Positions 15,871 to 36,330 of a stretch of DNA of 64,000 bases are shown piece by piece. Position 1 is the stretch's first letter, and each line of letters opens with the position of its first letter. Made by a program: the position numbers and the translations under genes. A model generated the notes under the pieces. The model did not search any database, was not told where the DNA came from, and was given only the letters and a program-made list of their open reading frames with translations. Source of the stretch: Octopus sinensis (Eukaryota); assembly GCF_006345805.1 (NCBI RefSeq), contig NC_043001.1, positions 134,354,001-134,418,000 of the forward strand. Direction: 5' to 3'.

Positions 15871-15952
15871 TGCTACCCATCATCATCTCTTTGGCCACCT
15901 GAGCAAATAAACAAGTCCTAGGTTATTGTATGCTCTCTATGCTTACACTCTT

Positions 15953-16559: not shown

Positions 16560-16793
16560 TTTAAGGCGGCGAGCTGGCAGAAACGTTAGCACGCCGGGCG
16601 AAATGCTTAGCGGTATTTCGTCTACGTTACGTTGTGAGTTCAAATTCCGCCGAGGTCGACTTTGCCTTTCATCTTTTCAGGGTCAATAAATTAAGTAGCA
16701 GTTACGCACTGGGGTCGATGTAATCGACTTAATACCTATGTCTGTCCTGTTTGTCCCTTCTGTGTTTAGCCCCTTGTGGGTAGTAAAGAAATA
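16560..16793 (+). mobile_element. SINE family B (Deu/Nin-like)
   Basis: GCGGCGAGCTGGCAG head; 11-bp TSD GGTTGGCAAAT at 16549-16559 and 16794-16804; inserted in an old family C copy. Confidence 0.9.
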
Positions 16794-17829
16794 GGTTGGC
16801 AAATGAGCAGAGAAAGCAAAGTGTTGTGATGTCCCTTTAATTTTGTCTAAGAACTACTCAACCTCCCTAATAATGGTGCCATAAGAAAATGCACCTAGTA
16901 CATTATGTAAAACAGCTAGCATTTAGCTGTAGAAACCAAGTCAAATGACAAGAGCCGTAGTCTATAGAAGCAGCAGCTTCCAATGAAAAAATGATTCAGA
17001 CATAATGACCTGTCCAACCCAGACAGCAAATGATGATGATTACAAAATATCATTTTTAGGTCACTGACTGTTTACACAAAAATCCAAACATTATTTTCTT
17101 TTTAAAGATACCGAAACATAAAATACCATTTTTTTTTATCAATTCACCTGCAAAAGTCATTAATATCTCAAAATTTGATTAAAGTGAAAATTTTCTCTTT
17201 TTATGCTAATGAAAAAGCTGTTTACTAGCAAATGAAAAACAGCCTATGGTATTTCCCAGAAAAACTAACATCTCTGTGATAACATATTCATTAATTTACT
17301 ATTGTGCCAGTCCAATAATCAGATTTTAAAATAGAAGTTAGTTCACTTCTTATTTAGCTTGTCAGGTTTAAATGTAGGATTATTGTAAAACAGCTGATAA
17401 TGCAATTAGGAAATTGTGGGTAAGGTCTGCAATATTAGTTAGTTGCTAACTATACAACAATGATGCAAGTACGTTATTTTAATGGGCAGGGCATCATAGC
17501 ATATGACTGCTAGACACAGACTAAGCACTGCCCCAGACTATCTTTTCTACTCTTGATGGTCATCGTTTTAAATTACTTGCCAATATTATAAAATTATTAT
17601 GTTAATGACAGTTTTAAGGTTCAAATCTTATGGGCCTTTTAAGAGTTTCATAAATGCTAGCTACAAGATAAAAGTTATTTGAGGAAATGCAAATATTTCT
17701 TCTGTTCCCACAAAATCTAAACACACATACGCTCCTGTTGATAATCTCATTCTTTTGCATGATTTCTATATCAAGACTAACACAAAGCCATTATCAAAAT
17801 ATTGTTTCAACTGAATAGCTGTGAATAAC

Positions 17830-18145
17830 ATCATCATCATCGTTTAACATCCGTTCTCCATGCTAGCATGGGTTGGACGGTTCGACCGGGGATCTGGGAA
17901 GCCAGAAGGCTGCACCATGCTCCAGTCTTATCTGGCAATGTTTCTACAGCTGGATGCCCTTCCTAACGCCAACCACTCCGTGAGTGTAGTGGGTGCTTTT
18001 TACGTGCCACCTGCACAGGTGCCAGGCGAGGCTGGCAACGGCCACGGTCGGATTGGTGTATTTTACGTGCCACTGGCACGGAAGCCAGTCGAGGTGGCGC
18101 TGGCATCGGCCACGAGTCGGATAGTGCTTTTTACGTACCACCAGA
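17830..18145 (-). mobile_element. RTE 3' UTR fragment (family C)
   Basis: (CAT)n tail, core and subrepeats in reverse orientation. Confidence 0.85.
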
Positions 18146-18409
18146 CATGGGATCCTGGCTGGTTCAATTCGATTTCGATTAAAATAGAATTGAAAATTCC
18201 AATTTAGCAACTTTATTGAAATTTATAAAACTGTTTTTAATTTGTAGCTTTACCTAAGCAACTTTTTCTGAAAAATTTGAGCAATTGCTGAAGTTATTTT
18301 CAGTAACATTGACCAAAAGGTATAACAAAAGAGTCATCAACAATCGCTCCCAATATATTGCTATTTAAATCTTTAAGAAGAAACCCCAAATTAGTCTGCA
18401 AAATACATT

Positions 18410-18768
18410 TACTCTTTTACTCTTTTCAGTCATTTTGACTGCGGCCATGCTGGAGCACCGCCTTTAGTCGAGCAAATCGACCCCAGGACTTATTCTATCG
18501 GTCTCTTTTGCTGAACCGCTAAGTGACGGGGACGTGAACACACCAGCATCGGTTGTCAAGCAATGCTAGGGGGACAAACACAGACACACAAACACACATA
18601 TATACGACTGGGTTCTTTCAGTTTCCGTCTACCAAATCCACTCACAAGGCATTGGTCGGCCCGGGGCTATAGCAGAAGACACTTGCCCAAGATGCCACGC
18701 AGTGGGACTGAACCCGGAACCATGTGGTTGGTTAGCAAGCTACTTACCACACAGCCACTCCTGCGCCT
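18410..18768 (-). mobile_element. tRNA-derived SINE, family A
   Basis: Reverse complement of 614-1017 with a shorter internal microsatellite. Confidence 0.88.
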
Positions 18769-19487
18769 TTGTTTTACTCCTTTGTTTTTGTTATACCTTT
18801 TTTCCTTGTTAGCATAAATGGGATTTTGATCACTTTGCTCCATACTGCTTACCTTTAGTAGTTAAACCTAAGTCAGATTGAAGCTAAAACAGCTGTGTCC
18901 TACCCAGAGGCACAACAATGTCCGTGTTTCAATTCAAATTCACGACAAGGTCAGAAGTTTATTGATATAAACACCAATAAAAATATAAATACACTTAAAA
19001 ATATTTTAAGACATAGTACAAACAGAAAATGTTCACAAAAGTTTAGTTTTCATAAAAGTCTAAAAACAGAAAAATATTTCAAACATTAAAGCTTATAAAC
19101 CAACAATAAAATAAATACACTTGAGATTTCACAGAAAACTAATGTAGTAATCTAAATAAATACAAAAAAGACAATTCAAATCATCTAAATTTTGTCACTA
19201 ATAATTGCAACTGGAAGACTGGGAAAAAAATGTAGTTACAAGAAGAAATTTGATCTGTTTCAGACCATGTTCTCCTTTGAAGAAAGAGCAGTTGTCTTCA
19301 GTCTATGCATCATCTCACTCAGCCCAAAGAGAAAGTTTCTTCTCTCTGAAGGCTTAATCTGAAATGTTAGAACATACAACAACATAGGAACTTAAAACAA
19401 CTTCGTTACTTTATTAATAAAAGCAATTTTTGCTAGTTTCCCTGGCTTCTAGGTTTCTTTCATTTATATATATATATATATATATAT

Positions 19488-20045
19488 CATCATCATCATT
19501 TAACTGGATGCCCTTCCTAACGCCAACCACTCCATGAGTGTAGTGGGTGTTTTTTACATGCCACCGGCACAGGGCCATAGGAGGCTGGCAAATGGCCACG
19601 ATCGGTTGGTGCTTTTACGTGTCACCGACACGGACACCAGTCAGGCGGCGCTGGCATCTGTCACGTTCGGATGGTGCTTTTTACATTTCACCGGCACAGT
19701 GTCTTATATATATATACTGGCTTCCGTGCCGGTGGCACGTAAAAAGCACCATCCGAATCGTGGCCAAAGCCAGTGCCGCCTCGACTGGCTTCCGTGCCGG
19801 TGGCACGTAAAATGCACCAGTCCGACCGTGGCCGATGCCAGCCTTGCCTGGCACCAGTGCAGGTGGCACGTAAAAAGCACCCACTACACTCACGGAGTGG
19901 TTGGCGTTAGGAAGGGCATCCAGCTGTAGAAACATTGCCAGATAAGACCGGAGCCTGGTGCAGCCTTCTGGCTTCCCAGATCCCTGGTCGAACAGTCCAA
20001 CCCATGCTAGCATGGAGAACGGACGTTAAATGATGATGATGATGA
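19488..20045. mobile_element. Two family C copies in inverted head-to-head orientation (19488-19703 -, 19717-20045 +)
   Basis: Left copy starts (CAT)n with an internal deletion; right copy ends (GAT)n; separated and flanked by (TA)n. Confidence 0.8.
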
Positions 20046-20694
20046 TATATATATTCACACACACACACACACCTGTAGATGGCTAAGTTGATACAGTTAG
20101 ACCTACAACCAAAGGATCAGTTATTCATATACAATTATTGAAGTCATACTAAGTCTATGCTAAAAAACAAATGGCTCAGTTTACTCAACCATCTAAAGGT
20201 ACCAACAGTAAAATTAGTAATAATTTTACTTGCTTCTTTATATACTGAATTTTACTTTGCCAGACTATCTTCCCTAGATATATTACATGGACACAAAAGT
20301 CTTGTTCGGCACCTTTCACTAACTACTAAGTTGGTAATGAAGCACTATATTTGCTCTATCATGCTAACTTGAATTATTGAGGTAGAAATTATTATAAGCA
20401 TTGAATCTGTCATGGCATCACACATATACTTGTTACCATAGCTAGTTGATTTCACTGACCCCAGCGCTCTACCTATCAACAGTTATCACTATCATATATC
20501 ATCATGAGTTAATGCTCCTGTTTCACTGCTGGTATGTTGGACAATTTGATAGGAACAAATGAGTCAGAGGGCTGTACCAAACTCCAATGTCTGCTTCGGC
20601 ATGGTTTCTACAGCTAGATGCCTTTCTTAATACCAACCGTTTTACAGAGTGTACTCGGTGACACGAGCAGTGGTGAGGTCACCAAGTATTCACA

Positions 20695-20969
20695 TCATCA
20701 TCATCATCATTGTTCGAACCGTGGTCGAGACAATGGAATTTACCATGCTACGCCAGACTTCACGGTCCATCATGGCATTACGGAGGTCCTGTTGCTGGAT
20801 GCTTGTATCCCTGGAGATTACATCAGGGTAGGAGAGTGTGCGCCCTCTGGTATTGCGAGTAGATGGCTTCCAGAGGAGAAGAGTAGAAATTACTTCTTTT
20901 TCAGCTCTACAACAATGTCCAGCAAACTGGACTCTCCTACCTTTCACAAGGTAGGAGAGTCCAAAGAAA
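20695..20969 (-). mobile_element. 3' fragment of a second RTE-like LINE with (TGA)n tail
   Basis: Encodes ...QFAGHCCRAEKEVISTLLLWKP...RGRTLSYPDVISRDT...AMMDREVWR; 11-bp TSD AAGTATTCACA at 20684-20694 and 20970-20980. Confidence 0.75.
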
Positions 20970-23900
20970 AAGTATTCACAAGACAAGACTCCTGACTGAG
21001 TAGGGTATAATAATGAGGGATGTGAAAATATAATTAAGGGACAGGAACAAGTGTCCTGCTGAAGAGGTAAATACTCGGCTTCCCCCATCTGGAAAGAGAA
21101 AATAGGAATTGCGCATCAGATAAAATGTCTCAGTATTCGTTCAGCCATCTGCACTCTGAATTCAACTTTGTTTTACATTCCTTCAGCACCAATAGATGAA
21201 GTACCAACTGATACATCATCATCTTCCCACCCCTCTCTTTCTCCTTAAAAGAAATTGTCTGTAGTTAAGATCTGGAGAGGGATGGGCTTCACCAGGTTTA
21301 GGTATCACAAAACATATTGTCACAACCAGCATCGAGTGCTACAGTAGTGGAGTTCAGGAGCCTCAATTGCCCCGAAATATAATTTAATTATACAGTTAGA
21401 GAAGTCCACTGGCAGAATTATTAGTATTGGACAAAATGCCTTGTGGATATTTGTTCTTGCTTTTTATGTTGTGAGTTCAAATTCTACTGAAATCAACTTT
21501 ACCTTTCATCCCTCCAAGGTTGATAAATAAAATACTACTTGAGTACTAGGGTTGATTTAATTGATAAACCCTGCTCCTCCCAAATTTCAGGCCTTGTGTT
21601 ATATTTTGACTGGGTGGGGTTGGTGTACCCACTGGCTTGGTACAGCACCCAAGTTTGGAAGCATAAATATGTTGTATATGTATATATATCTATATACAAA
21701 AGATAACATGTATTTTATTTATGACATACATAAAACAAGAGATGTATTACAATTTATAGTAAGAGTTTATACGTCTTAACTTATAACATTATGCTCTACA
21801 ATACATGCTATAGTTTGCTCAGATCTTACGGCTCAACTGATTGCTGATTAGAAAACGATTTATCTCACAGAATCACATTAAAATCAGCATAGCAGAGGAT
21901 TTATTCCTCAGACGTTTCAACGACGAAAGCAATTCGGTCAGACAGATTTGTTGTCGGATATTAAAACATTTTTTTAAAACTAAACATCCTCTTCTAAAAG
22001 GTGAGGATTCTTTAAACCAAATTTATATCTGATTAAAAGTTTTATTCGTGCTACTTGAAAATTTGCTACAGAATATTAAAATCATTTCTACAACAAAACT
22101 GCAGTAATAAAAAATTAGTGAAAAACACTGATTTCACCCTGAATGAAGTCGAGACAGAATTTCTATTTTAAATCCAATTTTTTTTCCAAAGACTTGCCTA
22201 GAAACCTCTAGTCATACATTACATAATATAAAAAATAGATAAATATAGCTAAAATCAAATTAAGATGGTGGTAAAACAGTGAATAACATAGTAACCCAAT
22301 TTTAATCTTAAATTTCAGTCAGTTGAGAAGCTAAAAAGCCAACATTATGTAGATTATGTTCTTGGTATATTTTAATCGACAGCATAGTATCCAAAAAGAT
22401 GTTATAATGCTTAGGTTTTTTGTAACAAAATGTTCATTTCCAGATTCCCATATATCAGATTTTCATTTCTACAATTCTTAATCGTGCTTTCCCTATCGTT
22501 ATCATCATTATTATTATTATTATACGGGCAAGATACACTTTTAGAATTAAAAGTTAACAGAATATATTTGGGGAAAAAAAAAATTGAACACAATTTAAAA
22601 TTCTAGCGACTTCTTTTCGTTACTTTAGATTTAGCAACTTTGGAATAATTCTAACGTAAAGTTTAGAACTATTAAGTTAAACAGCAAATAAGCTATTTTC
22701 GACGAGGGTCCTCATTGTGCTGTCAAAACTGATACAAGAATTTCTCCTCATTCAAACAATGACGTTTTCTCTAGACTTCGTTACACACAGAGACTAATAA
22801 TAAACCAAAAGTAAACCATTTATTTTCTCTCAACAAGAATTCTTTTAAATATATATATATATATTAACCTATATAATTCCTATAATCAAAATTGTTTATT
22901 ATTGCTTCAGTAATTCATTTACGTTAAGTCAAGTTATTGATAAATTTTTAAAAAAATAAAAATAAAAGCAAATGTCAGAATAGTTGTACATTTAGATTTA
23001 ATGGAAATTTCCCTTTGAATCCGTACAAAAATTCATGAATTATATAACATCGACGGAGATCTAGAAGGAGAGAATTCATATCTAAAGAACAAAATGGAAA
23101 TGGTTAATTTTTTTCATTCTCTCCACAACGAAATAATTAATCCCTTTCAAATTATCCTTACAATAATTTTCGAACTCGGCAGCGATATTGAGAAAAATCT
23201 AAACACACACAAGTACCTAATAAATATATTAATAATCATTTCTTTAATCTAATAAAATTATATTTCATAAAATTTAATTTCTCCATTCACGATGTCTTAA
23301 TTAATATTAGAGGTGCTTTTAAATTAAGGAGACTTACCACTTCAAACATAGATCTCTGTCTTAATTAATACGGTTGCTTTTTAAAAAAAAAAAAAATTTT
23401 ACCTACAATCTAATAAATAGTAATAAATATTTGATGATTCAAGATGCAGTTATAATTATTGCAAGCAACGAATATTTAAAAGATTTCTAATTTTACAATA
23501 ATCATTTACATTTGGAAATTAACAAGTCGAGCATGTTTTAACTAGCTCTCATGGTACTCAGTATTTAAGGAAAATACTGACCCCTTCATCTCCCTAATTC
23601 ACTTATATCGCAACCCTTCTGGATTTTTACATACAAAAGAACTTCAAGTCATAGGTGCTAGCTTCTTGATCTCTAATTATAAATGTAGAAAATGGAGAAC
23701 TAAACACTGCCTGGGAGAGAGAGAGACAGACAGACAGTAAATATATATATATATATTATATATATATATATAAACACACACACACACACATACGTATATA
23801 TTTATGTACATACAAAGGCTTAGAATGACCATAAACAAGGTTAATAGAGTAGAGTAGATCATAAGCTATCGGTAGGAGAGACAAGATATTTAAAACAGCT

Positions 23901-24009
23901 GATTATATAAAACTGATCGTTGAAAGACGAGTTTTTTCACAATATGAAGAACGAAGTAGTGCTTTCAGAACAATAAAATGCATTAGAAATATATTCCAAC
24001 AAACACACA

Positions 24010-24298
24010 CGCACATATATATGTATGTATATATATATGTGTGTGTATATATATATATATGTATGTGTATATATATATGTATGTATGTGTATATATATAT
24101 GTATGTGTATATATATATATATGTATGTGTATATATATATGTATGTATGTGTATATATATATGTATGTATGTATGTGTGTATATATATATATATATATAC
24201 TAAGTAATTAAGGGTTTAGCAACGATTTGCCTCACCACACACCGAATTTAGAAATAGCAGTCAGAGTTATGGCTATTCTTTCTACATATATATATATA

Positions 24299-24341
<43 letters not shown>

Positions 24342-24365
24342 GTATATATATATACACACATATGT
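24010..24365. repeat. Compound (TA)n/(TG)n microsatellites
   Basis: Direct observation. Confidence 0.95.
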
Positions 24366-24570
24366 ATAGACGTTGAGAAATCTAAAACTTTTATTTTTTT
24401 TACAAGAGAAAAGATATTCTTTATGCGTATTTGCGTGGTTGGGGAATCGAAACTCCAAACAAAAACGGTTCTTCATAAAAAGAGAGACGAGAGAGATTAG
24501 ATTAGATTAAGAAAAGAAAAGGAATAATAATAATAATAATAAAAGAAAGCACTTAAATGTTTAGACATAC

Positions 24571-24769
24571 CTCGATACATCTGAGCAATAGCAGTGGCCG
24601 AATTCTGAAAAGCCGACCAAAGTTTCTGAGCAGCGTATTCTCTTTCTGTTTGCAATCTCTCCTCCATGTTGGGCTCAGCGTCCAATTCTTGGAGGCACTG
24701 ACTCTCGAAATTGTTCAGCCAGTTCTCTCCCAGCTGATCCGATTGCTGCTGGCCTTCGTCTTGAGCCAT
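24571..24769 (-). CDS. HAPSTR1: HUWE1-associated stress response protein (C16orf72/UPF0472 family), coding exon 1; the rest is not found in the window
   Basis: MAQDEGQQQSDQLGENWLNNFESQCLQELDAEPNMEERLQTEREYAAQKLWSAFQNSATAIAQMYR aligns with human HWFSKWERQCL...QQKLWHLFQNSATAVAQLYK; 199 nt ending at a phase-1 donor G|GTATGT. Confidence 0.88.
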
Positions 24770-26484
24770 GGCAATGAAATGAAATCTGTGCCGCCAGTAT
24801 TCCGGCTTATTGTTTCGTCTCTCTCCCCTACTGTTTTTTGTTTTGTTTTGTTTTTTTTTTTTTTTAAATTATTATTGTTTTTTTTTTTAAATCTTTTTTT
24901 GCAAGCTACAGAAAACTTTGACGAGGAAACAACTCTTTTCTCAACAGCATGATGATGATGGCGTTATATGTGTATATATATATATATATATGTATCAATG
25001 AGAAAAGGGTGAAAGGATGGGGAAAATAAGGGGTAAGCGGGCGGTCGGTCGGTCAAAGAAATATGAAAGAAGGGCGGCGGCGACAACGGAGGAGATGGTG
25101 GCAGAGTAGATAATAGTTTCATACGTAATAAGGAGCGCTGCTTATTTTTTAAACGTTTACATATAAACTGAGCGCTCATCAACTCTAATGAAGAAGAAAA
25201 TAAAAAAAGCTGGAATACCGGTAAAGATTAACCAATACACAAGCGTAGTTATTAACAGTGATACGTCGTTCTTAGCTTCAAATATATAGCAGGGTAACCC
25301 AAGTAGTAGATAGATATTGGTGTATATATATATACATACATGTAGATGTATGTATGTATATGTGTTGTAGGAGACCCCTGCAATAGAAAATAGACAGAGT
25401 TTTAGTGGTGGGTTGCCTTTTTTTTTTCTCCAATTGTTATGAAAAAACTGTATGAAATAATAATAACTAAGTTATCTTTCACGGTGGAACAATATATTGT
25501 ATTATTCTCTCAATTTTTTCCCCTTCATTACACTATCTTCCGTATTGCGTTTCTTCCGTCTCCTCCAACTTTATTCCGGAAGAACTAGCTTACGCACGCG
25601 CATTGCCTCAAAAAAAAACAAAACAAGAACAACAAAAAAAAGAGATATTCGCATATAGAGATACGTATACGTATATACAGATAAACATAAACGTGCTCAC
25701 GCAGAGGCACACACATATACGCACGCATTCACTCCGTACGAACCGGAAACAATCAAAGGAGTTTCACTTCCTTTACAAAACAAAGACTAATGTTGTAAAC
25801 ACTAATAAATTTTTGGTATGAATAAAAAGAATAAACTTAATTACTGACATACGATAAAGATTTATAATTTCTGAGAAGGTAACTGAGAAAATCGATTTTC
25901 CTCATATACATATGTGTATGTGTGTGTATGCATACATTCTCGATTTTATGAACGTCATTTACCGATTTAAATGAAATTGAATATTTAGAGATTACAGCTG
26001 TTTTCCCTAATTTATTTATAGAAATATATCATTTCAAGCATGCTAAAATTGTAACTAATTAACGGTATTTTAGATATCACACGCGTATATATATAATATA
26101 TATATATATATACATATACACACGCACACACAAAACGGAATATTCCGATTAGCTACGATTGTTATAAATGAACAAATGTTTGTATTATTTCTTTAAAAAG
26201 AAAAAAAAAATGATAGAATAAGCTAATATTGTCTCAAGCTTTAATACATAAAATCTGATCTAAATTTTAGCCAATGTGAGAATTGAACAATTAGGCTACT
26301 AGAGCAGGTTATCCGATCTGGTGCGGCGGAATATACCGGGAAAATCCGAAAATAATCGGAGCGAATCCAACCGAAGAACAACGACGCCAAAGCAAAAGAT
26401 TACCGCCACGAAGTTGTGAAAAAATTTTTTTTTTTTTTCGTTTTTACTTGAAACCGAACGACGCTGCCTCTGGCCGCAACAGAC

Positions 26485-26512
26485 ATGACAGCCAAGGTCT
26501 CTCCGTCGGACG
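26485..26512 (+). CDS. Candidate alternative first coding exon of USP7 (MTAKVSPSD+1 nt)
   Basis: ATG ACA GCC AAG GTC TCT CCG TCG GAC G|GTGAGT: consensus phase-1 donor, frame-compatible with USP7 exon 2 at 55040; lies in a CpG-rich patch. Confidence 0.4.
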
Positions 26513-26744
26513 GTGAGTATAGAGGATCGCGTATTACTAAAGCGAGCGGCTTACCCAACCTCCCCAAGCATGGTAGGCGGCCATCTTGTTTATTTTTGTT
26601 CATCTTCGACCTGGAAGTGAAGAAATAGAAGAATCCGACTTCAATCCCTCCATTCGCTTCATTTCTACCAGCTTCCAAATCAACAACAAACCTCACATTG
26701 CCTAAATAACAGTTTTTTTCTTTTTTGCCTTCTGCTATATTTGT

Positions 26745-27030
26745 TTTTTACATATAATAATATATATATATATACACCTGTTCAATTTCAAAAAAAAATT
26801 GTCCAACACACATATATATACATATATATATATATATATTATATATATATATATAATATATATATATATATAATACCCTTAGTTCTCTCTCTCTTTCTCT
26901 CCCTCTCTTTCTTTCTCACTCTCTCTCCCTCTCTTTCTTTCTCACTCTCTCTCTTTCTATCTCTTTCTTTCTTTCTTTCCCTCTCTTTCTCTCTCTTTCT
27001 CTCCCTCTCTCTCCCTCTCAACTATATTTA
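26745..27030. repeat. (TA)n and (CT)n-rich low-complexity tract
   Basis: Direct observation. Confidence 0.9.
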
Positions 27031-28340
27031 TGTATACGAAAATATACATGTTTGTTCTTCCACCGTATGTATATATAGGTTGTCGTCCTAAACTAACAAA
27101 TTACAGAGATCGTATACAACATAGCTGACCAAATTTGAGTTTTACTACGCATCTATATAACCAGTTTTTTTTCCTTTTTTTTTCTCTTCCTCTGCCATTG
27201 ACCAAATTCTTTGCACCGATTCCTTATATTTTTCCTTCTAATCTAATCTTCTCCATACTTACACACCAACCAACCAAAACAAGAAAAAAAAATGCCTACT
27301 TTAACTGTTGTAAGTTTCACCCTTTAATGTGGACATTATTGGCAAAATTAGTTCAGTACCTAACTGTGTGGGAAAAGCAGAAAAATCACAGAAAACATCT
27401 TTCTGATATATATTTACCATTCATTTATTTACATAGGTGTCTTATCTGGAGACATCATCTCACACAGATATCTCCATTTGTTATTAGTTTACACACATAG
27501 CCACATACTTATACACATATATACTATATATACACTATATATATATACTATATATAGCTGTATCTATCTATCTCTATGTGTATTTTATGTGTGGAGCAAT
27601 AATAGTAGGACATTTAAGTTGATATTGCTCTCTCTTCTCTCTTCAAAAGCTTTCCTCTCAAGAACATTCTTACCTTCCATAAGTATTAAGAGAACATTTT
27701 TCCAGCAACGTAGTTTATTATCCAAACTAATTCTAATACATTTGATTTATATTTATATCTTTAACCATTGAGATTATCTCGTCATATTCTTTCCTAATTA
27801 CCGTTGCAACCTGCATTTGTCTGTATTAATATTTAGTATTATTCTATTATATAATAATTATTGACAGTATTAATTAATTTGAAAGCAAGTCATTTCTCAT
27901 TAATTTTACTGTTGTTGACTGAAATTGCAAACATAAACACACCTACACTTTATACACATATTTGCATACCTAAAATAAACACACATAAATTCAAATTTTA
28001 CACACACACACACACATATATATATATATCTACATATATATCCACATATCCACACAAGCACTTTATCTTTTTTCCCCTTTGCTCGGTCGATCGTTTCCCC
28101 CCCTCCCCCTCCACACAGGGGGGAAACCTTTTTCATTAATTTGTTCGCCTACTTAAAAAAAAACTTAGCCGGGAGTGCTTTGTCCCTTCCCCCGTGGTGG
28201 AAGGGGTCTGAAATACTGCAGACATTGGGCGCATCACCAGTAAACACGTCAAAGTGACTGTGTCGCAGAAAAGTCCTTCGACTCCGAGGCGAGAACATCG
28301 CCATAAGACGGTCACTGGAGGCGCTGGCGAGGAGGACACG

Positions 28341-28452
28341 ATGAACCATGTTAATGGCAAGACGACAGACACACAGGAGGCTGAGCAGCCACTACTGCAC
28401 CACCAACAACCACAACAACAACCGCAGGATGTTGAGATGGAATCCAGAGAGG
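28341..28452 (+). CDS. USP7: Ubiquitin carboxyl-terminal hydrolase 7, coding exon 1
   Basis: MNHVNGKTTDTQEAEQPLLHHQQPQQQPQDVEMESRE resembles human MNHQQQQQQQ...EDMEMEA; phase-1 donor G|GTTAGC. Confidence 0.8.
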
Positions 28453-29649
28453 GTTAGCAAATAATATATTTATATATATATATATACACACATACATATA
28501 TACACATATATAAACATATACATCTCATCTCATTCTCATCTCATCTCATAGTATTTTTCATTTTTTTTTTTCAAACCATTTCAGTTTTAATGTTTCAATC
28601 ATTATTGCTACTGTTTCTTTGTTGTTGTTATTCTATCTATTCTTCATATGTAAATATTTTCCAGAATGTTTTTTATATTTTTCCCATTTATTTTAAGAAA
28701 GGAAGGAAGGAGGATCAGTTTTGAAGTGTGAAGTCATCTTTTTTTTCCCCCTTTCCCAAAACTTCTCTTTTTTCCCATCTTTATATAAATCTCTCATCAT
28801 CTCTGTATATTATTTTCATCTTACCCATAATCTCTTCTTTATTAATTTTCCTCCCCATTTAATAGAAACCAAACCAGTAAAAAAATGCATTTGCAATAAA
28901 TAATAAATAAATAATATATGATGGAGTAATCTCATCCAGCCATGGTAGAAGAGAGAAAATAGGGGGGGACGAAATGGTTACAATGTGAGGGACCTGTATT
29001 ACATGAACACAGTATACAAAACCGGTCCCCCACTTTTTAACCAGCTATTAAATAACATTGCACCGGTCATTCCGTTTCCAATTTGCTATTTAATACTCTT
29101 TACATTTTAAAGTATTTTCCCAGTTTATTTCCTTTTTAAAACCTGCATTGTCAATAAAGATCCATTTATTTACTTTTATTTCAAACCCAGCCAAGAACGC
29201 TCCATCTTTTTTCTCCATTATTCGTAGACGTCTCTCTCTTGTAAAATCTCTCTCTCATCTTTTTAGTCCTCCCCATATAATTATTATTACCATTGAATTC
29301 CTTATATATTTCCCCCTCATCGATCGATCAATGGAAACTTTAGTTTCATTGCTCACTTCATTGCACATTGCCCGATGTTTATACGCATACATGTATGCGT
29401 GTATATATATATATACACACATATATATATACATACATACACACCACGTATATATATACGTTAGAAATGAAAACGCCTGTCCTTTTATATTTGAACTAAA
29501 ACCACCGATTCATGTGATGTTAGTGTTTTATTTCGTCGATTTTATCCGTGAAACATTTATATACCATATTTATGTATAACCATTTATTTTGCTTGGACAT
29601 CCTCCCCCCCTCCTCCATCTGGCCTCCATTTTCTATTTAATGTTTGGTT

Positions 29650-29682
29650 AAAGATGCGTAAAGGTGTGTGTGTGTATGTATA

Positions 29683-29721
<39 letters not shown>

Positions 29722-30060
29722 TTATGTTTTCCAGTTTCAGCTCTTGAGCTGTGGCCATGCTGGGGCACCGCCATATATATGTGTGTGTGTATATATATGT
29801 GTGTGTGTGTATATATATGTGTGTGTGTATGTATATATATATATATGTGTGTGTGTGTATGTATATATGTGTGTGTATGTATGTGTGTGTGTGTGTATGT
29901 ATGTATGTGTGTGTATGTATGTGTGTGTGTGTATGTATGTGTGTGTGTGTGTATGTATGTATATGTGTGTGTATGTATGTATATGTGTGTGTATATATAT
30001 ATGTGTGTGAGTGTATATATATGTGTGTGTGTGTGTATATATATATATAAATACACATGC
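29650..30060. repeat. Long (TG)/(TA)/(TATG) microsatellite enclosing a short family A SINE tail (~29725-29772)
   Basis: Direct observation; GCTGTGGCCATGCTGGGGCACCGCC matches the SINE A tail in reverse. Confidence 0.85.
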
Positions 30061-33000
30061 ACACGCAATAAATATGGTTGTTGCTTTAGATAGTGATTTA
30101 ATTAATCCAGCTACATGGTTGTTACCGAGAAGAAACAAGTCTACACAATTATAAGTGACTACCGTTATATGTCTGTACACCATCATTGTACTTACTGTTG
30201 GCCATTTCTCGACAACGAACAGCATATATTTAAAGAATTTAAGATCTGATGTGAGCCAGAAGATGTTGTGAACTTTCTGTATTACTATTATTATTATGAT
30301 TGTATCTGCGACATAACCATCTTTCTCCTTCACCGACCATTGGGGAGGAAACAGTGGAACAGCTTGTTCTTTTTACCAACACAATCCATTTAAATTTCTC
30401 TCTTACATGTTGGTTTTTCTTTACATTGCAATTAAAATAGTTGGTATTTCCAACATTAAGACGTTCCTCCATGCATTCTATTTGTTCATTGCCATGTGGC
30501 AAATGCCCTGAAATGTGCATTTATTTAACAATTATAAACTGAACTTCATATTAAAATAACCACGTTGCTTTTTATTATATTATAAGAGAACAATAGCTTC
30601 CGGACGGTTCAGTATTTACGAAATAAAACCATCCTAGAATAAACATCTCAGCATATCTATATATATATATATATAGATATAAACACGTAACAAACCTTTA
30701 CAATTAAGCTTTTCATAAAAATTAATAGGACATGATTTTTTTTTCATATATATATAGAGAGAGAGATTATGTCGTTGAAAGATATTGTTTCAGTTTTCAT
30801 ACTTCGGATAGAAAATTTGCCTGAAATAGGAGAAAAAAAATTATATCACTTTTACTCTTAATTTCATATTTGAAGATTTTACGAAATCAGTTTACCTGAC
30901 ATTTGTAACTGATCAACTTCAGTTACCTTAATTGAAAAAAATTATAAATCTTGTTTTTGCTATCATAGTTTTGTAAATAAGTTTGTCACTGTTTTCTAAA
31001 CGTAAAATTCAATTCTTTTTCAAATTTATATTTTTATTGTAGTTCTTTAGAAAGCTGTGTTTTATATTATGTAGAGCAGGGTGAAGGCTTATATATATGA
31101 AGCCGTGATTAAATAATGTTATATTAAATGCTATTAACAGCTGTAGATAGTTGACAGATTACCTTTATTTATAGTCACATAAAAAACATAACGAAACTCT
31201 TCATAAAATTTAAGTTGGATAAAGAACACCTTGTACGAATCAGTTGAACTTTCGTCTCCATTTATTTGTAGCTACTAATGTTTCCCCTTGTCTCGTAGGA
31301 TCTTAGAAGTTAATTTAAGAAAGCTATTGCTACATCACAGTAACTTGTGCTCTAGTTGGGTTTTTTTTTTCCATATCTGCAGCATGTATTTGTGTATATA
31401 AAACACCATGATAAATTAGGTATTAGCCAGGCATGTACAGTGGCTCGTGCTGATCTGATATATGCACTCAAAGCCTATCTAGAATATCTTCAGGAAAAAT
31501 AGAAGCAGGGTTCGAATAACACTGAACTCTGTTAAAGGTAGTCAAGAACCACAGTAATATTCACATTCATTTTTCTAGTCTTATATATAGACTTTGAACA
31601 ATCCATGGGAGTTCTCCAATAAAGGTCACCTGTTAGAAATAGCAAACCTCCCTCAAATCACTCTCTATAGCCTTAAATAAAAGGCTAATTTGTTCATAGA
31701 TCACATAAGGACAGCACTATATAAGCCTATTGATTCTTAACTAAACTTAATTTTGTCACAAAAGTTTGTTCGAGTCATTGTTGCTTGGTATTAAGTATTG
31801 AATGAGAATAAAGAAAAAGTTTCCATAAGGTTACTGAACAAAATAATGTGAGCTTAGTTCTGTGTCTGCTCTGTCAACCTGAACAGAGTAGTCATATAGA
31901 ATACGTTTCACAATAGCTAGAGCAAGATTGTTTTCATGAGTTTGGGCCAAATGGTTTTGCTATTGGATGTTTTTGGAACCACTTTAAATAAGAATTTGAA
32001 GTAGAACCTGTTTGTCAACCAGAAGCAATTTTTTTTAACCCAAGTGCAAGTGACTAGTTGTAGTCGAGTTGAAACTCTTGACCATAGTTCAACAGCACTG
32101 TAACCTTACACAAACTATTTGACCTTATTTTACCCAGAATTGATTTTTCAAGGTATTAATTTGGAATATAAAAAGTTCCTCAGAAAGTAAACAAAGGATA
32201 TTGGTTTCTGTATAAATAGACAGTACTAGAATTTTGTTTATTGTTCAGTTATTGCCATGGTTACCTCAAGTTATAAATCATCTAGTGAAACTGCTTGTCT
32301 GAAGTTTTCTGACACTGCTGTGTAGCAGTCTCTCTATTATCAGTTCATTGACCTACTTGCTGCTGTCAACACCTTTCCTCATTCTTTTGCCAGAGCTATT
32401 AAATGCAGAGTGAATATCTACAAAACATCCCATAATGTGAATTTGATCATTTAAGTTTCATTTGACAAAAATACATCAGCTTCATACAAACTTCCGGCAT
32501 TGTCCTCTCAACTAAGTACTCCCACATGCCTCAGCAATACTAAACTTATTCTTTCTGATAACCTTTCATAGAGGCCCTACATTCTTTACATTAGCCAAGC
32601 CAACCATTAAAGACTGCAGACCCTAAATTTACTATACAAGTACAGTCACACATTCAGGATGTCTGTAGCATAGATTCTTCAACCACTGGCTTTACTACAA
32701 TCTGTGTCCTTACATTGTCTTTTCTACTATAGTTATCCCTTCATAGTGTTGTTCATTTGGTAGCTGTTGTTTGTAACCAATTTTCTGATATTCAGCCAAC
32801 GTGTCTTCCCTTTTAATAGGAAACGAGCCAGTTGTTGGTGTCTTTCTCACAAAAATTGAACTGTTTTAATCCAATAGCTCATTTCGTAATTTTACACTGT
32901 AGCTATTTGTTTACAGTAGTGGTACCTTCATAGAGCTAAATAGGTGGGCAATTGAAAAAATAAAATGTTTTGACCACAGCACAGGAGCGATGAAAGACAC

Positions 33001-33219
33001 CAGTTTCTCAGCTGGTTAACTAGTACAATTTTTTTAAATTTTCACTCTCATCATCAGTACTTTCTTCCCCCTCTGTTCATTTAGATTTCATACTAAATCT
33101 CTATAAGAACTGCTTCTTTCTAAAATCAGCTTCATATTCACAAATCTCTCTTTCAAATTGAATATCAGCTACACTCACCTTGCCAAATATCTTACTATCC
33201 CTTTTCTTGTTTTGGGGAT

Positions 33220-33476
33220 TTAAACAGGCTACAACCATAATCTTACTAACCAGTATAGATACATAAAATTGTCAAAATTGACTTAAACAGGCTACAACCA
33301 TAATCTTACTAACCAGTATAGATACATAAAATTGTCAAAATTGACTTAAACAGGCTACAACCATAATCTTACTAACCAGTATAGATACATAAAATTGTCA
33401 AAATTGACTTAAACAGGCTACAACCATAATCTTACTAACCAGTATAGATACATAAAATTGTCAAAATTGACTTAAA
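33220..33476. repeat. Perfect 63-bp tandem repeat, 4 copies
   Basis: Unit TTAAACAGGCTACAACCATAATCTTACTAACCAGTATAGATACATAAAATTGTCAAAATTGAC starts at 33220, 33283, 33346 and 33409. Confidence 0.95.
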
Positions 33477-34908
33477 TTGAATTAGATTACAGCTTCTCTT
33501 TCACAAAAAGTATTTTAGGATTAAAAAATCAAACGATTTTTATTCAGAAGCTGAATTCAATCTAAGATATATTTCTAAATACTCTTGTCTTAACATTTTT
33601 TAAGACAACTCTAATTGAAAATTATTTTTGATACTTAAAAAATTACATGTTGTGAGGTGGTGGTGAGTTTCCAGTAAATTTAGTATATCTTATAAAGCCT
33701 GTTATTATTGTTTTTCAAATTTTATAGTCTTTCCCAAATTCATAACACCTGTAAAATCTGCAACAAAGAATATCCTTGATATCTTGACAAGGGAAAGTTT
33801 TAATTGTGAAGACATAGTGAACCAGTATTAAGTAGGATGTTCTTGTCATTTTTTACTTTCATTCTACACCATTGTTTGTGATGAATGAATTCATATCTTT
33901 AGATTTTTACCAGTGGTCATTTAGCTAGTATCTAAAATTCTGTCCATTTGAATGTTACCAATGTTTACTTAACCATTTTGTTACCATATTCCAGTTTAAA
34001 TGTGATTGCTTTGTTTTGGTTAACTTTGAAAATAATTTAGTGAAATAACTCGTTAATCTGGTGTTTGGAACATAAATTAACGTGAAATTTTGATGGAAGA
34101 TTTCTATTTAGATCACTTAAAAATAATGAATTAGTTTCAGAGAACTAGGGGACAGTTTAAAAAAACAATAAATCATTCGTTCTTAAGGGTTGAGTAATTA
34201 GTATTGAAAAATATCCAAAATTTATTTTTGATATCACTGGCAATTTTATGATAAAGTTTTAGCATAAAACATGAAAAATATACCCTCCTTTGCATCATGT
34301 TCTTTTTTTTTTCTCATTGCAAGCAAACTAAATATTATCAAAATCAGTGGTTTTTAGACATCGTTACCTCATTGATTGATTGTTTGTTTTTTCTTAGAAA
34401 ATTCCTTCTCATTATAACTCCAACCCCCACCTCCCTCCCATACACATACAACTCAATGTTTGTGATTGTTGAGTCTTTTACAAAAAACTCTTCTCTTTTG
34501 CAAGATCTTAAGTTTTTTGTTTTGTTTTATTTTTAGTGCACTTTCTGTTATTGACTACACACCTCACCAACTCTGTTTCTTTGCTGGTTATTGTCAAACA
34601 TTTTATTCTTTCATTGCTTTCTTTGTCTTTTTAAATGTTTTATATCTCCGCTTTAAAGATTGTTACTACCTTATAATTACCTTCTTTGTTCCTTTCTATC
34701 ATATAACTCATTAGGTACAGTAGACATTTGCTTCAAATATTCTGCAAGGATTTAATACCTTTTGTTTCTGCTCGTCAGAAATGTCTTATTTATTTGTATA
34801 TCTGCTTTATGTCATACTCTGCTTTCTCAGATGGACAGATTTTGTTAAATTTGAAAGTCAGATATGTATCTCCTTTATCAGAAAGTGAATGATATGTGAA
34901 ACAAAAAG

Positions 34909-35200
34909 TAGGCATGACTGTATGGTTAAGAGGCTTGCTTTGCAACCATATGGTTTCAAGTTCAGTCCTACTTCACAGATAACTCTAGACTGACTCATGC
35001 CTTGCATGTATATATATGTGTGTGAATGTGTTTGTCTTTGTCCCCCAACTACTTGGCTTGTTGATGCTTCCATGACTTAGCAATTTGGCTGTAAAAACCA
35101 ATAGAATAAGACCATACTTGAAAATATTGGGTTTGGTTTTACTAAAACCTTTTGAAGATGGTGACCCAACATGGCCATAGTCCAATGACTGAAACAAGTA
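34909..35200 (+). mobile_element. Degenerate SINE, family A
   Basis: Diverged head and tail (GGCCATAGTCCAATGACTGAAACAAG). Confidence 0.65.
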
Positions 35201-36330
35201 GAAGAAAAAACGAATTTCTTAGATTACGATGTTTGAAAAGCAGATTTTCTGTATATATCCATACATAAATTTTCTATTTTCATCATGCAAAATCTAAGGA
35301 TATTACTCTATTCTCTTTCTCTAAATATTCCAAATATCTTAATTTCTACATATTTTTTTTTAATATGCCATTTTACAACTCTAATCAGGACTTTGGAACC
35401 AGTACAGTACACAAAACCTTCAACTCTGCATCCTTTATTTGTAATTAAACTAATCATGTTATATTGATTGAAAGCACACCAATTATGCCACTTATTAGCA
35501 CCTTAACCTTTTGAGGTGTAAAGGCTATAGCTATGTTAAGGGTTTTTAATATTTATTGAAGAAGTTACAAATACTTCAGACAAAATTTTTAAAGGGCTAC
35601 TTTTATCAAAAGCCCATAAAAAAAGGATATAATAGAAATAAACTATAAAAATACTATAAAATAGTCTATATCAATTAAATCTGTAATACTAAACATCTAC
35701 AAAAACTTGAGCATTTTAAATTAAACGTAATATTTCTCCCTTCCTTTTCACTATTAACACATTTGAAACCTTGACATGGCAGTTTGCATTTTTATAAACT
35801 CTGCTTCCAAGTTAGCAATCCAGTAATTACTTCCAACTCTACAGCCCTCAGTAATAAACTTTCTTTTCTTGGATTGTCTATTATCATTAGACTGAAATAT
35901 TGTTTCTGACAACCTTAGAATTTCTTTGCAAGATGATTCTCCTTTCCAATATTTTTCATGCACACACACACACCATGCATTTGGTCCACACTATATTTAT
36001 TGCTGTACAGGGATTATTTCTTTTTCTGTCATGTTATGGTGACATGAAATTTGTACATTGCTCTCTTCTCTTTAGTTTTTTTTGTTTTTTTTTTTACCAT
36101 CCAAATTTTTTGTAGTTTTCTTCCCTTTAATAAATCTGTTTTCGATTTATTTACAATTTCATATATAATTTTCATCCCATTTTTTTATTAGAATTTCTAT
36201 TTCATTATGTAAAAAAGTGTTTGTTGAAGAGAAGCAAAATAAGGCAGAATGGTTATTAGTTCATACTTCACACAACCTAACTGGGGAAAAAGTCATTGAA
36301 AATAGGTGTTCTGATGTGTGTGTGTGTGCA

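What the first reader, a model, noticed from the sequence alone, without database searches (positions are those of the whole stretch)
24571..28452. HAPSTR1 and its stabilising deubiquitinase USP7 sit head-to-head, as in human
Seen: HAPSTR1 exon 1 (-) and USP7 exon 1 (+) diverge with only 3.57 kb between the ATGs. Established, from memory: human USP7 and C16orf72/HAPSTR1 are divergently oriented neighbours on 16p13.2 (over 100 kb apart), and USP7 has been reported as an upstream regulator of HAPSTR1 stability in the HAPSTR1-HUWE1 stress and p53 pathway. Inference: an enzyme-substrate pair has kept its linkage since the mollusc-vertebrate split, although coleoid genomes are known for broken synteny. 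Here it may share one bidirectional promoter, giving a co-regulated, operon-like stress module.
Basis: partly seen in the sequence, partly recalled or inferred. Interest (0 to 1): 0.75.

Follow-up and report, generated by a model that had tools for sequence, protein, structure and literature searches.

The report
Ancient head-to-head USP7–HAPSTR1 gene pair
The window holds the starts of two genes that work together in human cells, HAPSTR1 and the deubiquitinase USP7, lying back to back across what looks like one shared promoter island; the same arrangement is found in snails, scallops, ribbon worms, lamp shells and sea urchins, so the pairing is ancient.

Summary
The minus-strand exon 24571-24769 is HAPSTR1 exon 1 (Pfam TAPR1-like, E 2.9e-14; pN/pS 0.03 against Argonauta). 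The plus-strand exon ending at 28452 belongs to USP7, whose MATH and Cys-box exons follow at 57.8-62.2 kb.

One correction. USP7 has a further upstream coding exon (26485-26512, MTAKVSPSD). It joins in frame to a conserved acceptor at 28222.

USP7 lies head-to-head directly upstream of HAPSTR1 in Argonauta, Patella, Argopecten, Lineus, Lingula and Lytechinus. It is not there in Owenia, amphioxus, Bombus or Priapulus. The linkage therefore appears to predate the protostome-deuterostome split, with several apparent losses.

A shared promoter is supported only indirectly:
- The gap is the one CpG-undepleted stretch in the window (o/e 1.40 against 0.42).
- It carries an ETS plus NRF1-like module found in all five mollusc loci and an invariant 17-mer (YY1-like core).
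- In scallop the two transcription starts must lie within about 180 bp.

Co-expression and the "stress module" idea are untested, and "operon-like" is only a metaphor. This is a new member of a known kind: a conserved bidirectional gene pair.

The parts
1..24570 (-). HAPSTR1 intron 1 (partial). Exon 2 and later exons lie beyond the left edge of the window.
   Evidence: tblastn with 17 full-length HAPSTR1 proteins and with Argonauta P0295 finds only exon 1. Argonauta intron 1 is about 17 kb. The content here is mostly SINE-like repeats.
24571..24769 (-). HAPSTR1 exon 1, coding part: MAQDEGQQQSDQLGENWLNNFESQCLQELDAEPNMEERLQTEREYAAQKLWSAFQNSATAIAQMYR plus one base (phase 1).
   Evidence: Pfam PF15251, E 2.9e-14. 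Phmmer against 1.84 billion proteins gave 268 hits at E<=0.001; the full-length ones fetched align as one HAPSTR1-type family and recover named HAPSTR1/C16orf72 orthologues. pN/pS is 0.03 against Argonauta and 0.10 against a second cephalopod.
24903..24963 (.). Block just upstream of the HAPSTR1 ATG that is conserved in all three cephalopods. Candidate HAPSTR1 core promoter or 5'UTR.
   Evidence: Three-way MAFFT alignment. Inference only; no TSS data.
24770..26600 (.). CpG-undepleted island that fills the space between the HAPSTR1 ATG and USP7 exon 1 plus its conserved intron start. Candidate shared promoter region.
   Evidence: 76 CpG, o/e 1.40, against 0.42 for the whole window. It is the only stretch with o/e above 1. 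It is collinear with Argonauta at 71-83% identity although synonymous sites differ at pS 0.455.
25576..25602 (+). ETS/GABP-type site CCGGAAG, 11 nt spacer, then NRF1-like GCACGCGCA. Candidate core of the bidirectional promoter.
   Evidence: Same order, strand and 17-18 nt spacing in Argonauta, the second cephalopod, Patella and Argopecten; an NRF1 palindrome at the same place in Lineus. In scallop the HAPSTR1 mRNA 5' end abuts the ETS site.
26485..26512 (+). USP7 exon 1, coding part: ATG ACA GCC AAG GTC TCT CCG TCG GAC G = MTAKVSPSD plus G, phase 1, donor GTGAGT.
   Evidence: The same exon is the annotated CDS start of USP7 in Patella (MTAKVSSMDG) and Argopecten (MTAKVSRDDG). It is also present in Argonauta and the second cephalopod.
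26513..26630 (+). Highly conserved first ~120 nt of USP7 intron 1. It holds the invariant 17-mer GCCATCTTGTTTATTTT at 26580-26596 (YY1-like core followed by a TGTTTAT forkhead-like stretch).
   Evidence: About 85% identical overall to the second cephalopod, with a near-invariant core, although synonymous sites are near saturation. The 17-mer occurs exactly once, on the USP7 strand, in the window and in every other lophotrochozoan paired locus that reaches this region. About 4e-5 hits are expected by chance.
28184..28206 (+). Inverted repeat or hairpin (CCCTTCC...GGAAGGG) 15 nt upstream of the exon 2 acceptor.
   Evidence: A CCCC-loop-GGGG hairpin sits at the same position in Argonauta, Patella, Argopecten, Lineus and Lingula, with different loops and stem extensions. 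Fold z-scores are weak (-0.3 to -2.1). Function unknown.
28222..28452 (+). USP7 exon 2. Acceptor ctgcag|ACATTGGGCG. It encodes (D)IGRITSKHVKVTVSQKSPSTPRREHRHKTVTGGAGEEDT, then MNHVNGKTTDTQEAEQPLLHHQQPQQQPQDVEMESRE.
   Evidence: In-frame splice from exon 1. The acceptor and the open frame upstream of MNH are conserved in Argonauta, Patella, Argopecten, Lineus, Lingula and Lytechinus. The MNH...E[VM]EME N-terminus is shared with human, urchin and other USP7 proteins.
28453..57813 (+). USP7 intron 2 (29.4 kb), rich in repeats.
   Evidence: Phase-1 donor and phase-1 acceptor. The junction peptide ...[15 protein letters not shown] resembles P0002 ...EEMEEDESRAEATF. An extra small exon inside this intron cannot be excluded without transcripts.
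57814..62220 (+). USP7 exons 3-8: 57814-57916, 58141-58239, 58376-58449, 60124-60188, 60953-61041, 62112-62220. They encode the MATH domain and the catalytic Cys box [16 protein letters not shown].
   Evidence: tblastn; splice sites read directly; translation; Pfam MATH_2 7e-27, MATH 4e-17, UCH 3e-7. The best database matches are USP7 at up to 79% identity.

Best explanation
The window holds the 5' ends of two divergently transcribed, single-copy housekeeping-type genes: HAPSTR1 on the minus strand and USP7 on the plus strand. They form an ancestral bilaterian head-to-head pair.

In compact lophotrochozoan genomes the two start codons are 285-590 bp apart, so there one short bidirectional promoter must serve both genes. 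In this cephalopod the interval has grown to 1.7 kb. It is still one continuous CpG-undepleted island, and it keeps the same ETS/GABP-type plus NRF1-like module in its middle and the same YY1-like 17-mer just inside USP7.

The most likely reading is that both genes are driven from this shared island. Overlap of their promoter elements would make any breakpoint between them damaging, and that would explain why the pair survived even in a heavily rearranged coleoid genome. Joint control of a deubiquitinase and the protein it stabilises in human cells is a plausible consequence. It is not shown.

Shown here: gene identities, orientation, distances, conservation of adjacency, conserved motifs, the CpG profile, and the scallop mRNA 5' end.

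Inferred: TSS positions in the cephalopod, factor binding, promoter sharing, co-expression, and the reason the pair was retained.
For: Gene identity.

Adjacency. USP7 (MATH + UCH + USP7_ICP0_bdg + USP7_C2, about 1100 aa) is on the opposite strand directly upstream of HAPSTR1, with no gene between them:
- Argonauta: 3.4 kb to the MNH ATG and 1.85 kb to exon 1.
- Patella: 285 bp.
- Argopecten: 287 bp.
- Lineus: 591 bp.
- Lingula: 581 bp.
- Lytechinus: 8.2 kb.
tblastn confirms USP7 exons in four of these loci. The gene coordinates given are CDS starts.

Promoter evidence:
- CpG o/e is 1.40 over 24770-26600 against 0.42 for the whole window.
- The ETS-N11-NRF1-like module has conserved order and spacing in five molluscs.
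- The 17-mer is invariant in all the paired lophotrochozoan loci that reach that region.
- The scallop RNA-seq contig places the HAPSTR1 mRNA 5' end 181 bp from the USP7 ATG, next to the ETS site.
- The intergenic blocks are 80-83% identical to Argonauta, while synonymous sites differ at pS 0.455.
- GABP, NRF-1 and YY1 sites are among the motifs reported as over-represented in human divergent promoters, and a GABP site can confer bidirectional activity (PMC2077898).

Functional link in human cells: PMC10921065, PMC11148184.
Against: - No transcript 5' ends, chromatin data or expression data for any cephalopod were available.
- The ATG-to-ATG distance of 1715 bp exceeds the usual 1 kb limit for a bidirectional promoter, so two separate promoters inside one island are possible.
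- The pair has been broken in Owenia, amphioxus, Bombus and Priapulus, so the constraint is not absolute.
- In human the genes are, from memory, more than 100 kb apart, so a shared core promoter cannot explain their retention there.
- The motif names are consensus resemblances, not binding data.
- Only one species per non-mollusc phylum was sampled, with 10 kb flanks.
Confidence: 0.65

Rival explanations
1. Adaptive co-regulation module. The linkage is kept because selection favours matched expression of the deubiquitinase and its substrate or adaptor in the HUWE1/p53 stress pathway. The shared promoter is the means, not the cause.
For: USP7 stabilises HAPSTR1, the two proteins interact, and they are among each other's top co-essential genes (PMC10921065, PMC11148184). 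Adjacency is kept in protostomes and deuterostomes. It persists in human even without a short shared promoter (adjacency: PMC11148184; spacing from memory).
Against: Where USP7 is gone, HAPSTR1 sits head-to-head with unrelated genes: a Rhomboid gene 100 bp away in Priapulus and a CID/CREPT gene about 950 bp away in Bombus. This suggests the promoter is intrinsically bidirectional whatever the partner. Four of ten sampled non-cephalopod lineages lack the pair within the 10 kb examined. No expression data exist here, and the interaction has been tested only in mammals.
Confidence: 0.3
2. Passive relic with two independent promoters. In the cephalopod each gene has its own promoter: HAPSTR1 near 24.8-25.1 kb and USP7 near 26.4 kb, possibly with another before 28.3 kb. 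The adjacency is simply an ancestral state that has not yet been broken.
For: A separate block near the HAPSTR1 ATG (24903-24963) is conserved in three cephalopods. A separate conserved block surrounds USP7 exon 1. The distance is 1.7 kb. The pair has been lost in several lineages.
Against: The CpG-undepleted state is continuous over the whole 1.8 kb. The best-conserved module lies midway, about 800-880 bp from either ATG. In scallop that same module sits within a 181 bp inter-gene space that must hold both starts. Survival in a coleoid genome known for lost synteny argues for some constraint.
Confidence: 0.25
3. Chance or convergent adjacency, or a mistaken orthology (pseudo-exon or paralogue).
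For: Only 66 codons of HAPSTR1 are in the window. The first word-indexed protein search returned a single hit.
Against: Pfam E 2.9e-14. There are 268 family hits. pN/pS is 0.03. Argonauta has the same exon as exon 1 of a complete four-exon gene next to a complete USP7. The same orientation and the same non-coding 17-mer occur in three phyla, which independent origins cannot produce.
Confidence: 0.02

Closest known systems
Human USP7 - HAPSTR1 (C16orf72/TAPR1) locus at 16p13.2
   Same: The same two orthologous genes are immediate neighbours (PMC11148184). They are co-amplified and co-deleted as a unit (PMC11148184, PMC5417293). Their products interact, and USP7 stabilises HAPSTR1 (PMC10921065).
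   Different: From memory, the human genes are divergent but more than 100 kb apart, so they cannot share a core promoter. Here the coding starts are 1.7 kb apart, and in other lophotrochozoans 0.3-0.6 kb. The upstream MTAKVS exon and the IGRITSKHVKV extension of USP7 were not seen in the vertebrate N-termini sampled.
GABP/NRF-1/YY1-type bidirectional promoters of divergent gene pairs (PMC2077898; ZNF143 study PMC3082894)
   Same: Head-to-head genes, a CpG-rich interval, and ETS/GABP-type CCGGAAG, NRF1-like and YY1-like motifs.
   Different: The standard definition needs TSSs less than 1 kb apart. That is unknown here, and the ATG-to-ATG distance is 1715 bp. Binding and bidirectional activity are untested, and the organism is a mollusc, not a mammal.
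Functionally linked bidirectional pairs such as FOXM1/RHNO1 (PMC8104967)
   Same: Two genes of one pathway arranged head-to-head, with proposed co-regulation from the shared interval.
   Different: For FOXM1/RHNO1, promoter sharing and co-expression were measured. Here both are inferred.
Ancient conserved metazoan microsynteny pairs (concept recalled from the comparative-genomics literature, not read here)
   Same: Adjacency and orientation are kept across phyla on both sides of the protostome-deuterostome split, with secondary losses.
   Different: I found no paper in the searchable library that names this pair as conserved outside vertebrates. It may still sit in supplementary lists that I could not search.

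Membership tests
HAPSTR1 / TAPR1-like (Pfam PF15251) | N-terminal part of the TAPR1-like domain, with the first FQNSATA[IV]AQ[LM]Y motif | tested here: met
   Pfam positions 1-45 of 249, E 2.9e-14, 53.9 bits against a cut-off of 27. Aligns to HAPSTR1 of many phyla.
HAPSTR1 / TAPR1-like (Pfam PF15251) | Rest of the domain: second FQNAA...LYK repeat, RRxIRRE[DE]L motif, the HUWE1-binding residues listed in PMC9834230, and the C-terminal basic tail | not testable with these tools
   These exons lie outside the window. They are present in Argonauta P0295, whose exon 1 is 90% identical to the window's.
HAPSTR1 / TAPR1-like (Pfam PF15251) | A functional, selected coding exon rather than a decayed copy | tested here: met
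   pN/pS is 0.03 against Argonauta and 0.10 against a second cephalopod. The frame is open and the donor is intact.
USP7 / HAUSP | N-terminal MATH (TRAF-like) domain | tested here: met
   MATH_2 7e-27 and MATH 4.3e-17 on the spliced product.
USP7 / HAUSP | USP catalytic Cys box directly after the MATH domain | tested here: met
   [22 protein letters not shown] is 92% identical to human over 38 aa. Pfam UCH positions 1-26.
USP7 / HAUSP | Remainder of the catalytic domain and the C-terminal UBL domains (USP7_ICP0_bdg, USP7_C2) | not testable with these tools
   They lie beyond position 64000. They are present in the syntenic Argonauta gene.
Bidirectional-promoter gene pair | Two protein-coding genes on opposite strands, 5' ends facing, with no gene between them | tested here: met
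   No ORF with a family match lies in 24770-26484.
Bidirectional-promoter gene pair | Transcription start sites less than 1 kb apart | not testable with these tools
   No cephalopod transcript ends were available. The ATG-to-ATG distance is 1715 bp. In scallop the limit is at most 181 bp.
Bidirectional-promoter gene pair | CpG-rich interval and the characteristic motif set (GABP/ETS, NRF-1, YY1) | tested here: met
   CpG o/e 1.40 against 0.42. Motifs. Motif set per PMC2077898. These are sequence matches only.
Bidirectional-promoter gene pair | Correlated expression, and activity in both directions from one fragment | not tested
   Needs RNA-seq, CAGE or reporter assays.
Ancient conserved microsynteny pair | The same two orthologues adjacent in the same relative orientation in several phyla, including protostomes and deuterostomes | tested here: met
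   Mollusca (3 classes), Nemertea, Brachiopoda, Echinodermata. Human adjacency from PMC11148184. Absent in 4 sampled lineages.
Operon | Genes on the same strand transcribed as one polycistronic RNA | tested here: not met
   The genes are on opposite strands and diverge.

The most novel reading that the evidence does not exclude
USP7 and HAPSTR1 form a bilaterian-wide regulatory unit more than 550 million years old. One compact ETS/NRF1/YY1-type bidirectional promoter would set the ratio of a deubiquitinase to the HUWE1 adaptor it stabilises.

The same unit carries two USP7 features I found neither in the USP7/HAPSTR1 papers read here nor in the vertebrate N-termini sampled. One is a tiny first coding exon plus an N-terminal extension (IGRI[TA]SKHVKV...) in frame upstream of the textbook MNH start. 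This extension is conserved from sea urchin to molluscs, with near-invariant nucleotides. The other is an invariant 17-nt intronic element. Together these would give USP7 an ancient alternative N-terminus or translational control element tied to the shared promoter.
Probability: 0.3. Interest if true: 0.65.

Novelty: new member of a known kind. Interest (0 to 1): 0.5.

Why it matters
HAPSTR1 was characterised only recently, and its link to USP7 rests on human-cell data. A head-to-head arrangement that has survived in at least five phyla, including a cephalopod genome that lost much ancestral gene order, is independent evolutionary evidence that the two genes belong together, or at least that their promoters cannot be pulled apart.

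It gives a concrete, small and testable element: a 27-bp ETS/NRF1-like module and an invariant 17-mer. It also provides natural "uncoupled" lineages (amphioxus, Owenia, insects, priapulids) for comparison.

The corrected USP7 5' structure matters for annotation. Several public gene models start USP7 at the MNH codon and miss a conserved upstream coding exon.

Tried and rejected
1. Later HAPSTR1 exons in 1-24570. None was found, so intron 1 is longer than 24.5 kb.

2. The word-indexed protein search with the 67-aa exon gave one hit only. The full HMMER scan was needed.

3. An Rfam scan of 23-30 kb gave only sub-threshold miRNA-family hits on (TA/TG)n microsatellites. Nothing was found in the conserved blocks.

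4. I considered that the conserved block at 26.4-26.6 kb might be a minus-strand 5' exon of HAPSTR1. There is a GTAAGC donor on the minus strand next to the YY1-like site. I rejected this because the donor is not conserved in the second cephalopod and no pyrimidine-rich acceptor precedes the HAPSTR1 ATG.

5. I first placed the exon 2 acceptor at 28119/28120. That splice runs into a stop. The conserved acceptor at 28221|28222 gives an open frame.

6. A consensus RNA structure for the USP7 leader. RNAalifold finds the GTGACYGT/ACGGTCAC stem, but the covariation term is about 0, so no structure is claimed. The hairpins before the acceptor fold in every species, but their z-scores are weak.

7. 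The look-up of Tachypleus HAPSTR1 was not on record.

8. Long ORFs elsewhere in the window gave no Pfam family.

9. Literature searches for prior description of the conserved pair found nothing relevant.
Full report
**What is in the sequence**

The minus strand has an open exon from the ATG at 24769 down to 24571, ending at a GTATGT donor. Its 66 codons read MAQDEGQQQSDQLGENWLNNFESQCLQELDAEPNMEERLQTEREYAAQKLWSAFQNSATAIAQMYR.

- They match Pfam PF15251 (TAPR1-like, the HAPSTR1/C16orf72 family) over profile positions 1-45, with E 2.9e-14 and 53.9 bits against a cut-off of 27.
- A full HMMER scan of 1.84 billion representative proteins gave 268 hits at E<=0.001.
- The full-length hits fetched are 235-292 aa HAPSTR1-type proteins. 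A profile built from them returned named HAPSTR1/C16orf72 orthologues from molluscs to mammals.
- The exon is 90% identical in protein to exon 1 of Argonauta hians HAPSTR1.
- It evolves under strong purifying selection: pN/pS 0.03 against Argonauta and 0.10 against a second, unidentified cephalopod.
- No later HAPSTR1 exon lies in 1-24570, so intron 1 exceeds 24.5 kb. It is about 17 kb in Argonauta.

On the plus strand the exon ending at 28452 encodes MNHVNGKTTDTQEAEQPLLHHQQPQQQPQDVEMESRE.

- The MNH...E[VM]EME N-terminus is shared with human, sea urchin and other USP7 proteins.
- Its phase-1 donor fits the phase-1 acceptor at 57814. The next six exons (57814-62220) encode the MATH domain and the catalytic Cys box.
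- Pfam scores on the spliced product are MATH_2 7e-27, MATH 4e-17 and UCH 3e-7.
- The best database matches are USP7 at up to 79% identity.

They served only to locate exons, and every result was re-checked with database proteins.

**A correction to the USP7 5' end**

Contigs of a second cephalopod (L001-L006, found through protein P0001) share only two blocks with the window in this region. One is HAPSTR1 exon 1. The other is a roughly 200-bp block at 26424-26630.

That block holds ATGACAGCCAAGGTCTCTCCGTCGGACG|GTGAGT, which encodes MTAKVSPSD plus one base.

- The same mini-exon is the annotated start of the USP7 coding sequence in Patella vulgata (MTAKVSSMDG) and Argopecten irradians (MTAKVSRDDG).
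- It is also present in Argonauta.
- Spliced to a conserved acceptor, YAG|ACATTGGGCG (window 28221|28222), it reads through in frame as MTAKVSPSD-D-IGRITSKHVKVTVSQKSPSTPRREHRHKTVTGGAGEEDT-MNHVNG....
- The frame upstream of MNH is open and similar in Argonauta, Patella, Argopecten, Lineus and Lingula. It is also open in the sea urchin Lytechinus, which reads AEIGRIASKHVKV....
- A transcript-derived protein of unknown origin (P0025) carries IGRIASKHAKV as well.

The nearest USP7 start codon is 1715 bp from the HAPSTR1 start codon. MNH may still be an alternative start. I had no cephalopod transcripts with which to decide.

**Is the linkage ancestral?**

I looked up the genomic context of HAPSTR1 orthologues with 10 kb flanks. 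The coordinates returned are coding starts.

USP7 is the immediate upstream neighbour on the opposite strand in these species:

| Species | Group | Gap to HAPSTR1 ATG |
|---|---|---|
| Argonauta hians | cephalopod | 3.4 kb to MNH; 1.85 kb to exon 1 |
| Patella vulgata | gastropod | 285 bp |
| Argopecten irradians | bivalve | 287 bp |
| Lineus longissimus | nemertean | 591 bp |
| Lingula anatina | brachiopod | 581 bp |
| Lytechinus pictus | echinoderm | 8.2 kb, no gene between |

In each case the neighbour is about 1100 aa with MATH, UCH, USP7_ICP0_bdg and USP7_C2 domains. tblastn confirms USP7 exons on that strand in four of the loci.

USP7 is not within 10 kb in these species:

| Species | Upstream neighbour |
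|---|---|
| Owenia fusiformis | INTS15 |
| Branchiostoma lanceolatum | a short-chain dehydrogenase |
| Bombus pascuorum | a CID/CREPT gene |
| Priapulus caudatus | a Rhomboid gene, 100 bp away |

PMC11148184 states that the human genes are directly adjacent. Their divergent orientation and spacing of more than 100 kb are my recollection only.

The simplest history is one origin before the protostome-deuterostome split, followed by several losses. Convergence is excluded by shared non-coding sequence (see the next section).

**Is there a shared promoter?**

Direct evidence is lacking for cephalopods. The indirect evidence is consistent.

1. *CpG profile.* The interval 24770-26600 has CpG o/e 1.40, against 0.42 for the whole window. 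It is the only stretch above 1. The ratio drops sharply after 26650.

2. *Conservation against Argonauta.* The interval aligns in collinear blocks: 24562-25306 at 71%, 25367-25621 at 83% and 26248-26797 at 80%. The exon 2 region, 27999-28522, aligns at 80.5%. Synonymous sites of the adjacent exon differ at pS 0.455, and the introns align only at repeats.

3. *A conserved module in the middle.* CCGGAAG-N11-GCACGCGCA lies at 25576-25602. The same two motifs, in the same order and strand and with 17-18 nt spacing, occur in Argonauta, the second cephalopod, Patella and Argopecten. Lineus has a GCGCATGCGC palindrome at that place. By my estimate, the chance of this pair at fixed spacing in a 300-bp interval is below 1e-6 per species.

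4. *An invariant 17-mer.* GCCATCTTGTTTATTTT has a YY1-like core. It lies about 60 nt past the exon 1 donor. It occurs exactly once, on the USP7 strand, in the window and in every other lophotrochozoan locus with the pair that reaches this region, and nowhere else in the 374 kb examined. About 4e-5 hits are expected by chance.

5. *Scallop transcript end.* An RNA-seq contig (L011) is the spliced HAPSTR1 mRNA of scallop. Its 5' end maps 107 nt upstream of the ATG, next to the ETS site and 181 bp from the USP7 ATG. Both starts must therefore lie inside about 180 bp.

6. *Motif set.* GABP, NRF-1 and YY1 sites are among the motifs reported as over-represented in human divergent promoters, and a single GABP site can confer reverse activity (PMC2077898).

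Against a single promoter in the octopus:
- The interval is 1.7 kb.
- A separate conserved block lies close to the HAPSTR1 ATG at 24903-24963.
- There are no TSS data.

**Why was the pair retained?**

Two readings remain open.

- *Structural constraint.* Overlapping promoters cannot be separated without harming one gene.
- *Selection for joint control* of an enzyme and the protein it stabilises.

Where USP7 has been lost as neighbour, HAPSTR1 is still head-to-head with another gene in Priapulus and Bombus. This favours an intrinsically bidirectional HAPSTR1 promoter and the structural reading. On the other hand, persistence of adjacency in human without a short interval hints at something more. 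"Operon-like" is not apt, because the genes are on opposite strands.

**Comparison with what is known**

Already published:
- the human adjacency (PMC11148184);
- the USP7-HAPSTR1-HUWE1 functional link (PMC10921065, PMC11148184, PMC8045932, PMC9834230);
- the general biology of bidirectional promoters (PMC2077898, PMC3082894, PMC8104967).

Full-text searches found no paper describing conservation of this pair outside vertebrates. Supplementary microsynteny lists could not be searched.

I therefore rate this a new member of a known kind. It is of moderate interest to people working on HAPSTR1/USP7 or on conserved gene order. The unannotated USP7 exon, the N-terminal extension and the invariant 17-mer add value.

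**Limits**

- One species per non-mollusc phylum, with 10 kb flanks.
- Non-bilaterians were not sampled.
- No cephalopod transcripts.
- Motif identities are consensus matches only.
- The window's species was not identified.

Noticed in passing
window 26485-26512 and 28222-28340 (+): Conserved USP7 first coding exon (MTAKVSPSD) and an in-frame N-terminal extension (DIGRITSKHVKVTVSQKSP...) upstream of the usual MNH start. The frame and the acceptor YAG|ACATTGGGCG are conserved from molluscs to sea urchin. Several public models (Argonauta, Lineus, Lingula, Lytechinus) start at MNH and miss it. Nucleotide conservation, including third positions, is higher than coding constraint alone would explain.
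   Followed up: partly
window 26580-26596 (+): Invariant 17-mer GCCATCTTGTTTATTTT in USP7 intron 1, identical in cephalopods, gastropod, bivalve, nemertean and brachiopod. Absent from the urchin locus and from the unpaired loci. Its role is unknown; it could be an intronic enhancer, an alternative TSS element or a splicing element.
   Followed up: partly
window 28184-28206 (+): Hairpin-forming inverted repeat 15 nt before the exon 2 acceptor. A CCCC-loop-GGGG hairpin sits at the same place in five other species, with different loops. Fold z-scores are weak.
   Followed up: partly
window 28254-28261 and 28308-28315 (+): Inverted repeat GTGACTGT...ACGGTCAC inside the N-terminal extension, kept in most species (with a G-U wobble here). 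RNAalifold predicts the stem, but there is almost no covariation, so it may simply reflect the VTV/TVT peptide.
   Followed up: partly
L008/L009 (Patella) 21-26 kb, L015 (Lingula) 16.4-22.7 kb, L017 (Bombus) 16.7-22.2 kb: An ankyrin-repeat gene of about 480 aa, with a SAM domain in Patella and Lingula, lies just downstream of HAPSTR1 in a gastropod, a brachiopod and a bee. It may be a second conserved neighbour. Orientation differs between species.
   Followed up: no
L018 (Priapulus) 1-9900; L017 (Bombus) 6706-9047: Where USP7 is not the neighbour, HAPSTR1 is still head-to-head with another gene: a Rhomboid-domain gene 100 bp away and a CID/CREPT gene about 950 bp away. The partner was swapped rather than the arrangement lost.
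   Followed up: no
window 7857-8076, and copies near 2433, 7186, 11113, 14097, 19894, 40015, 44780, 56762; a second family near 4260, 17824, 55242: Two families of roughly 150-bp interspersed repeats with many copies, also abundant in the Argonauta locus. One copy is directly preceded by a tRNA-Arg(TCT)-like sequence at 7857-7929, suggesting a tRNA-derived SINE.
   Followed up: partly
window 38475-39366: About 900 bp similar (64%) to a stretch in the Argonauta locus (L007 40894-41799). The translated fragments look like the C-terminal part of a LINE reverse transcriptase. Not verified by a family search.
   Followed up: no
window 23990-24370, 26070-26135, 29370-30000: Long (TA)n/(TG)n microsatellites that produce many sub-threshold Rfam miRNA-family hits (mir-297, mir-466 and others). 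These are artefacts of low complexity.
   Followed up: yes
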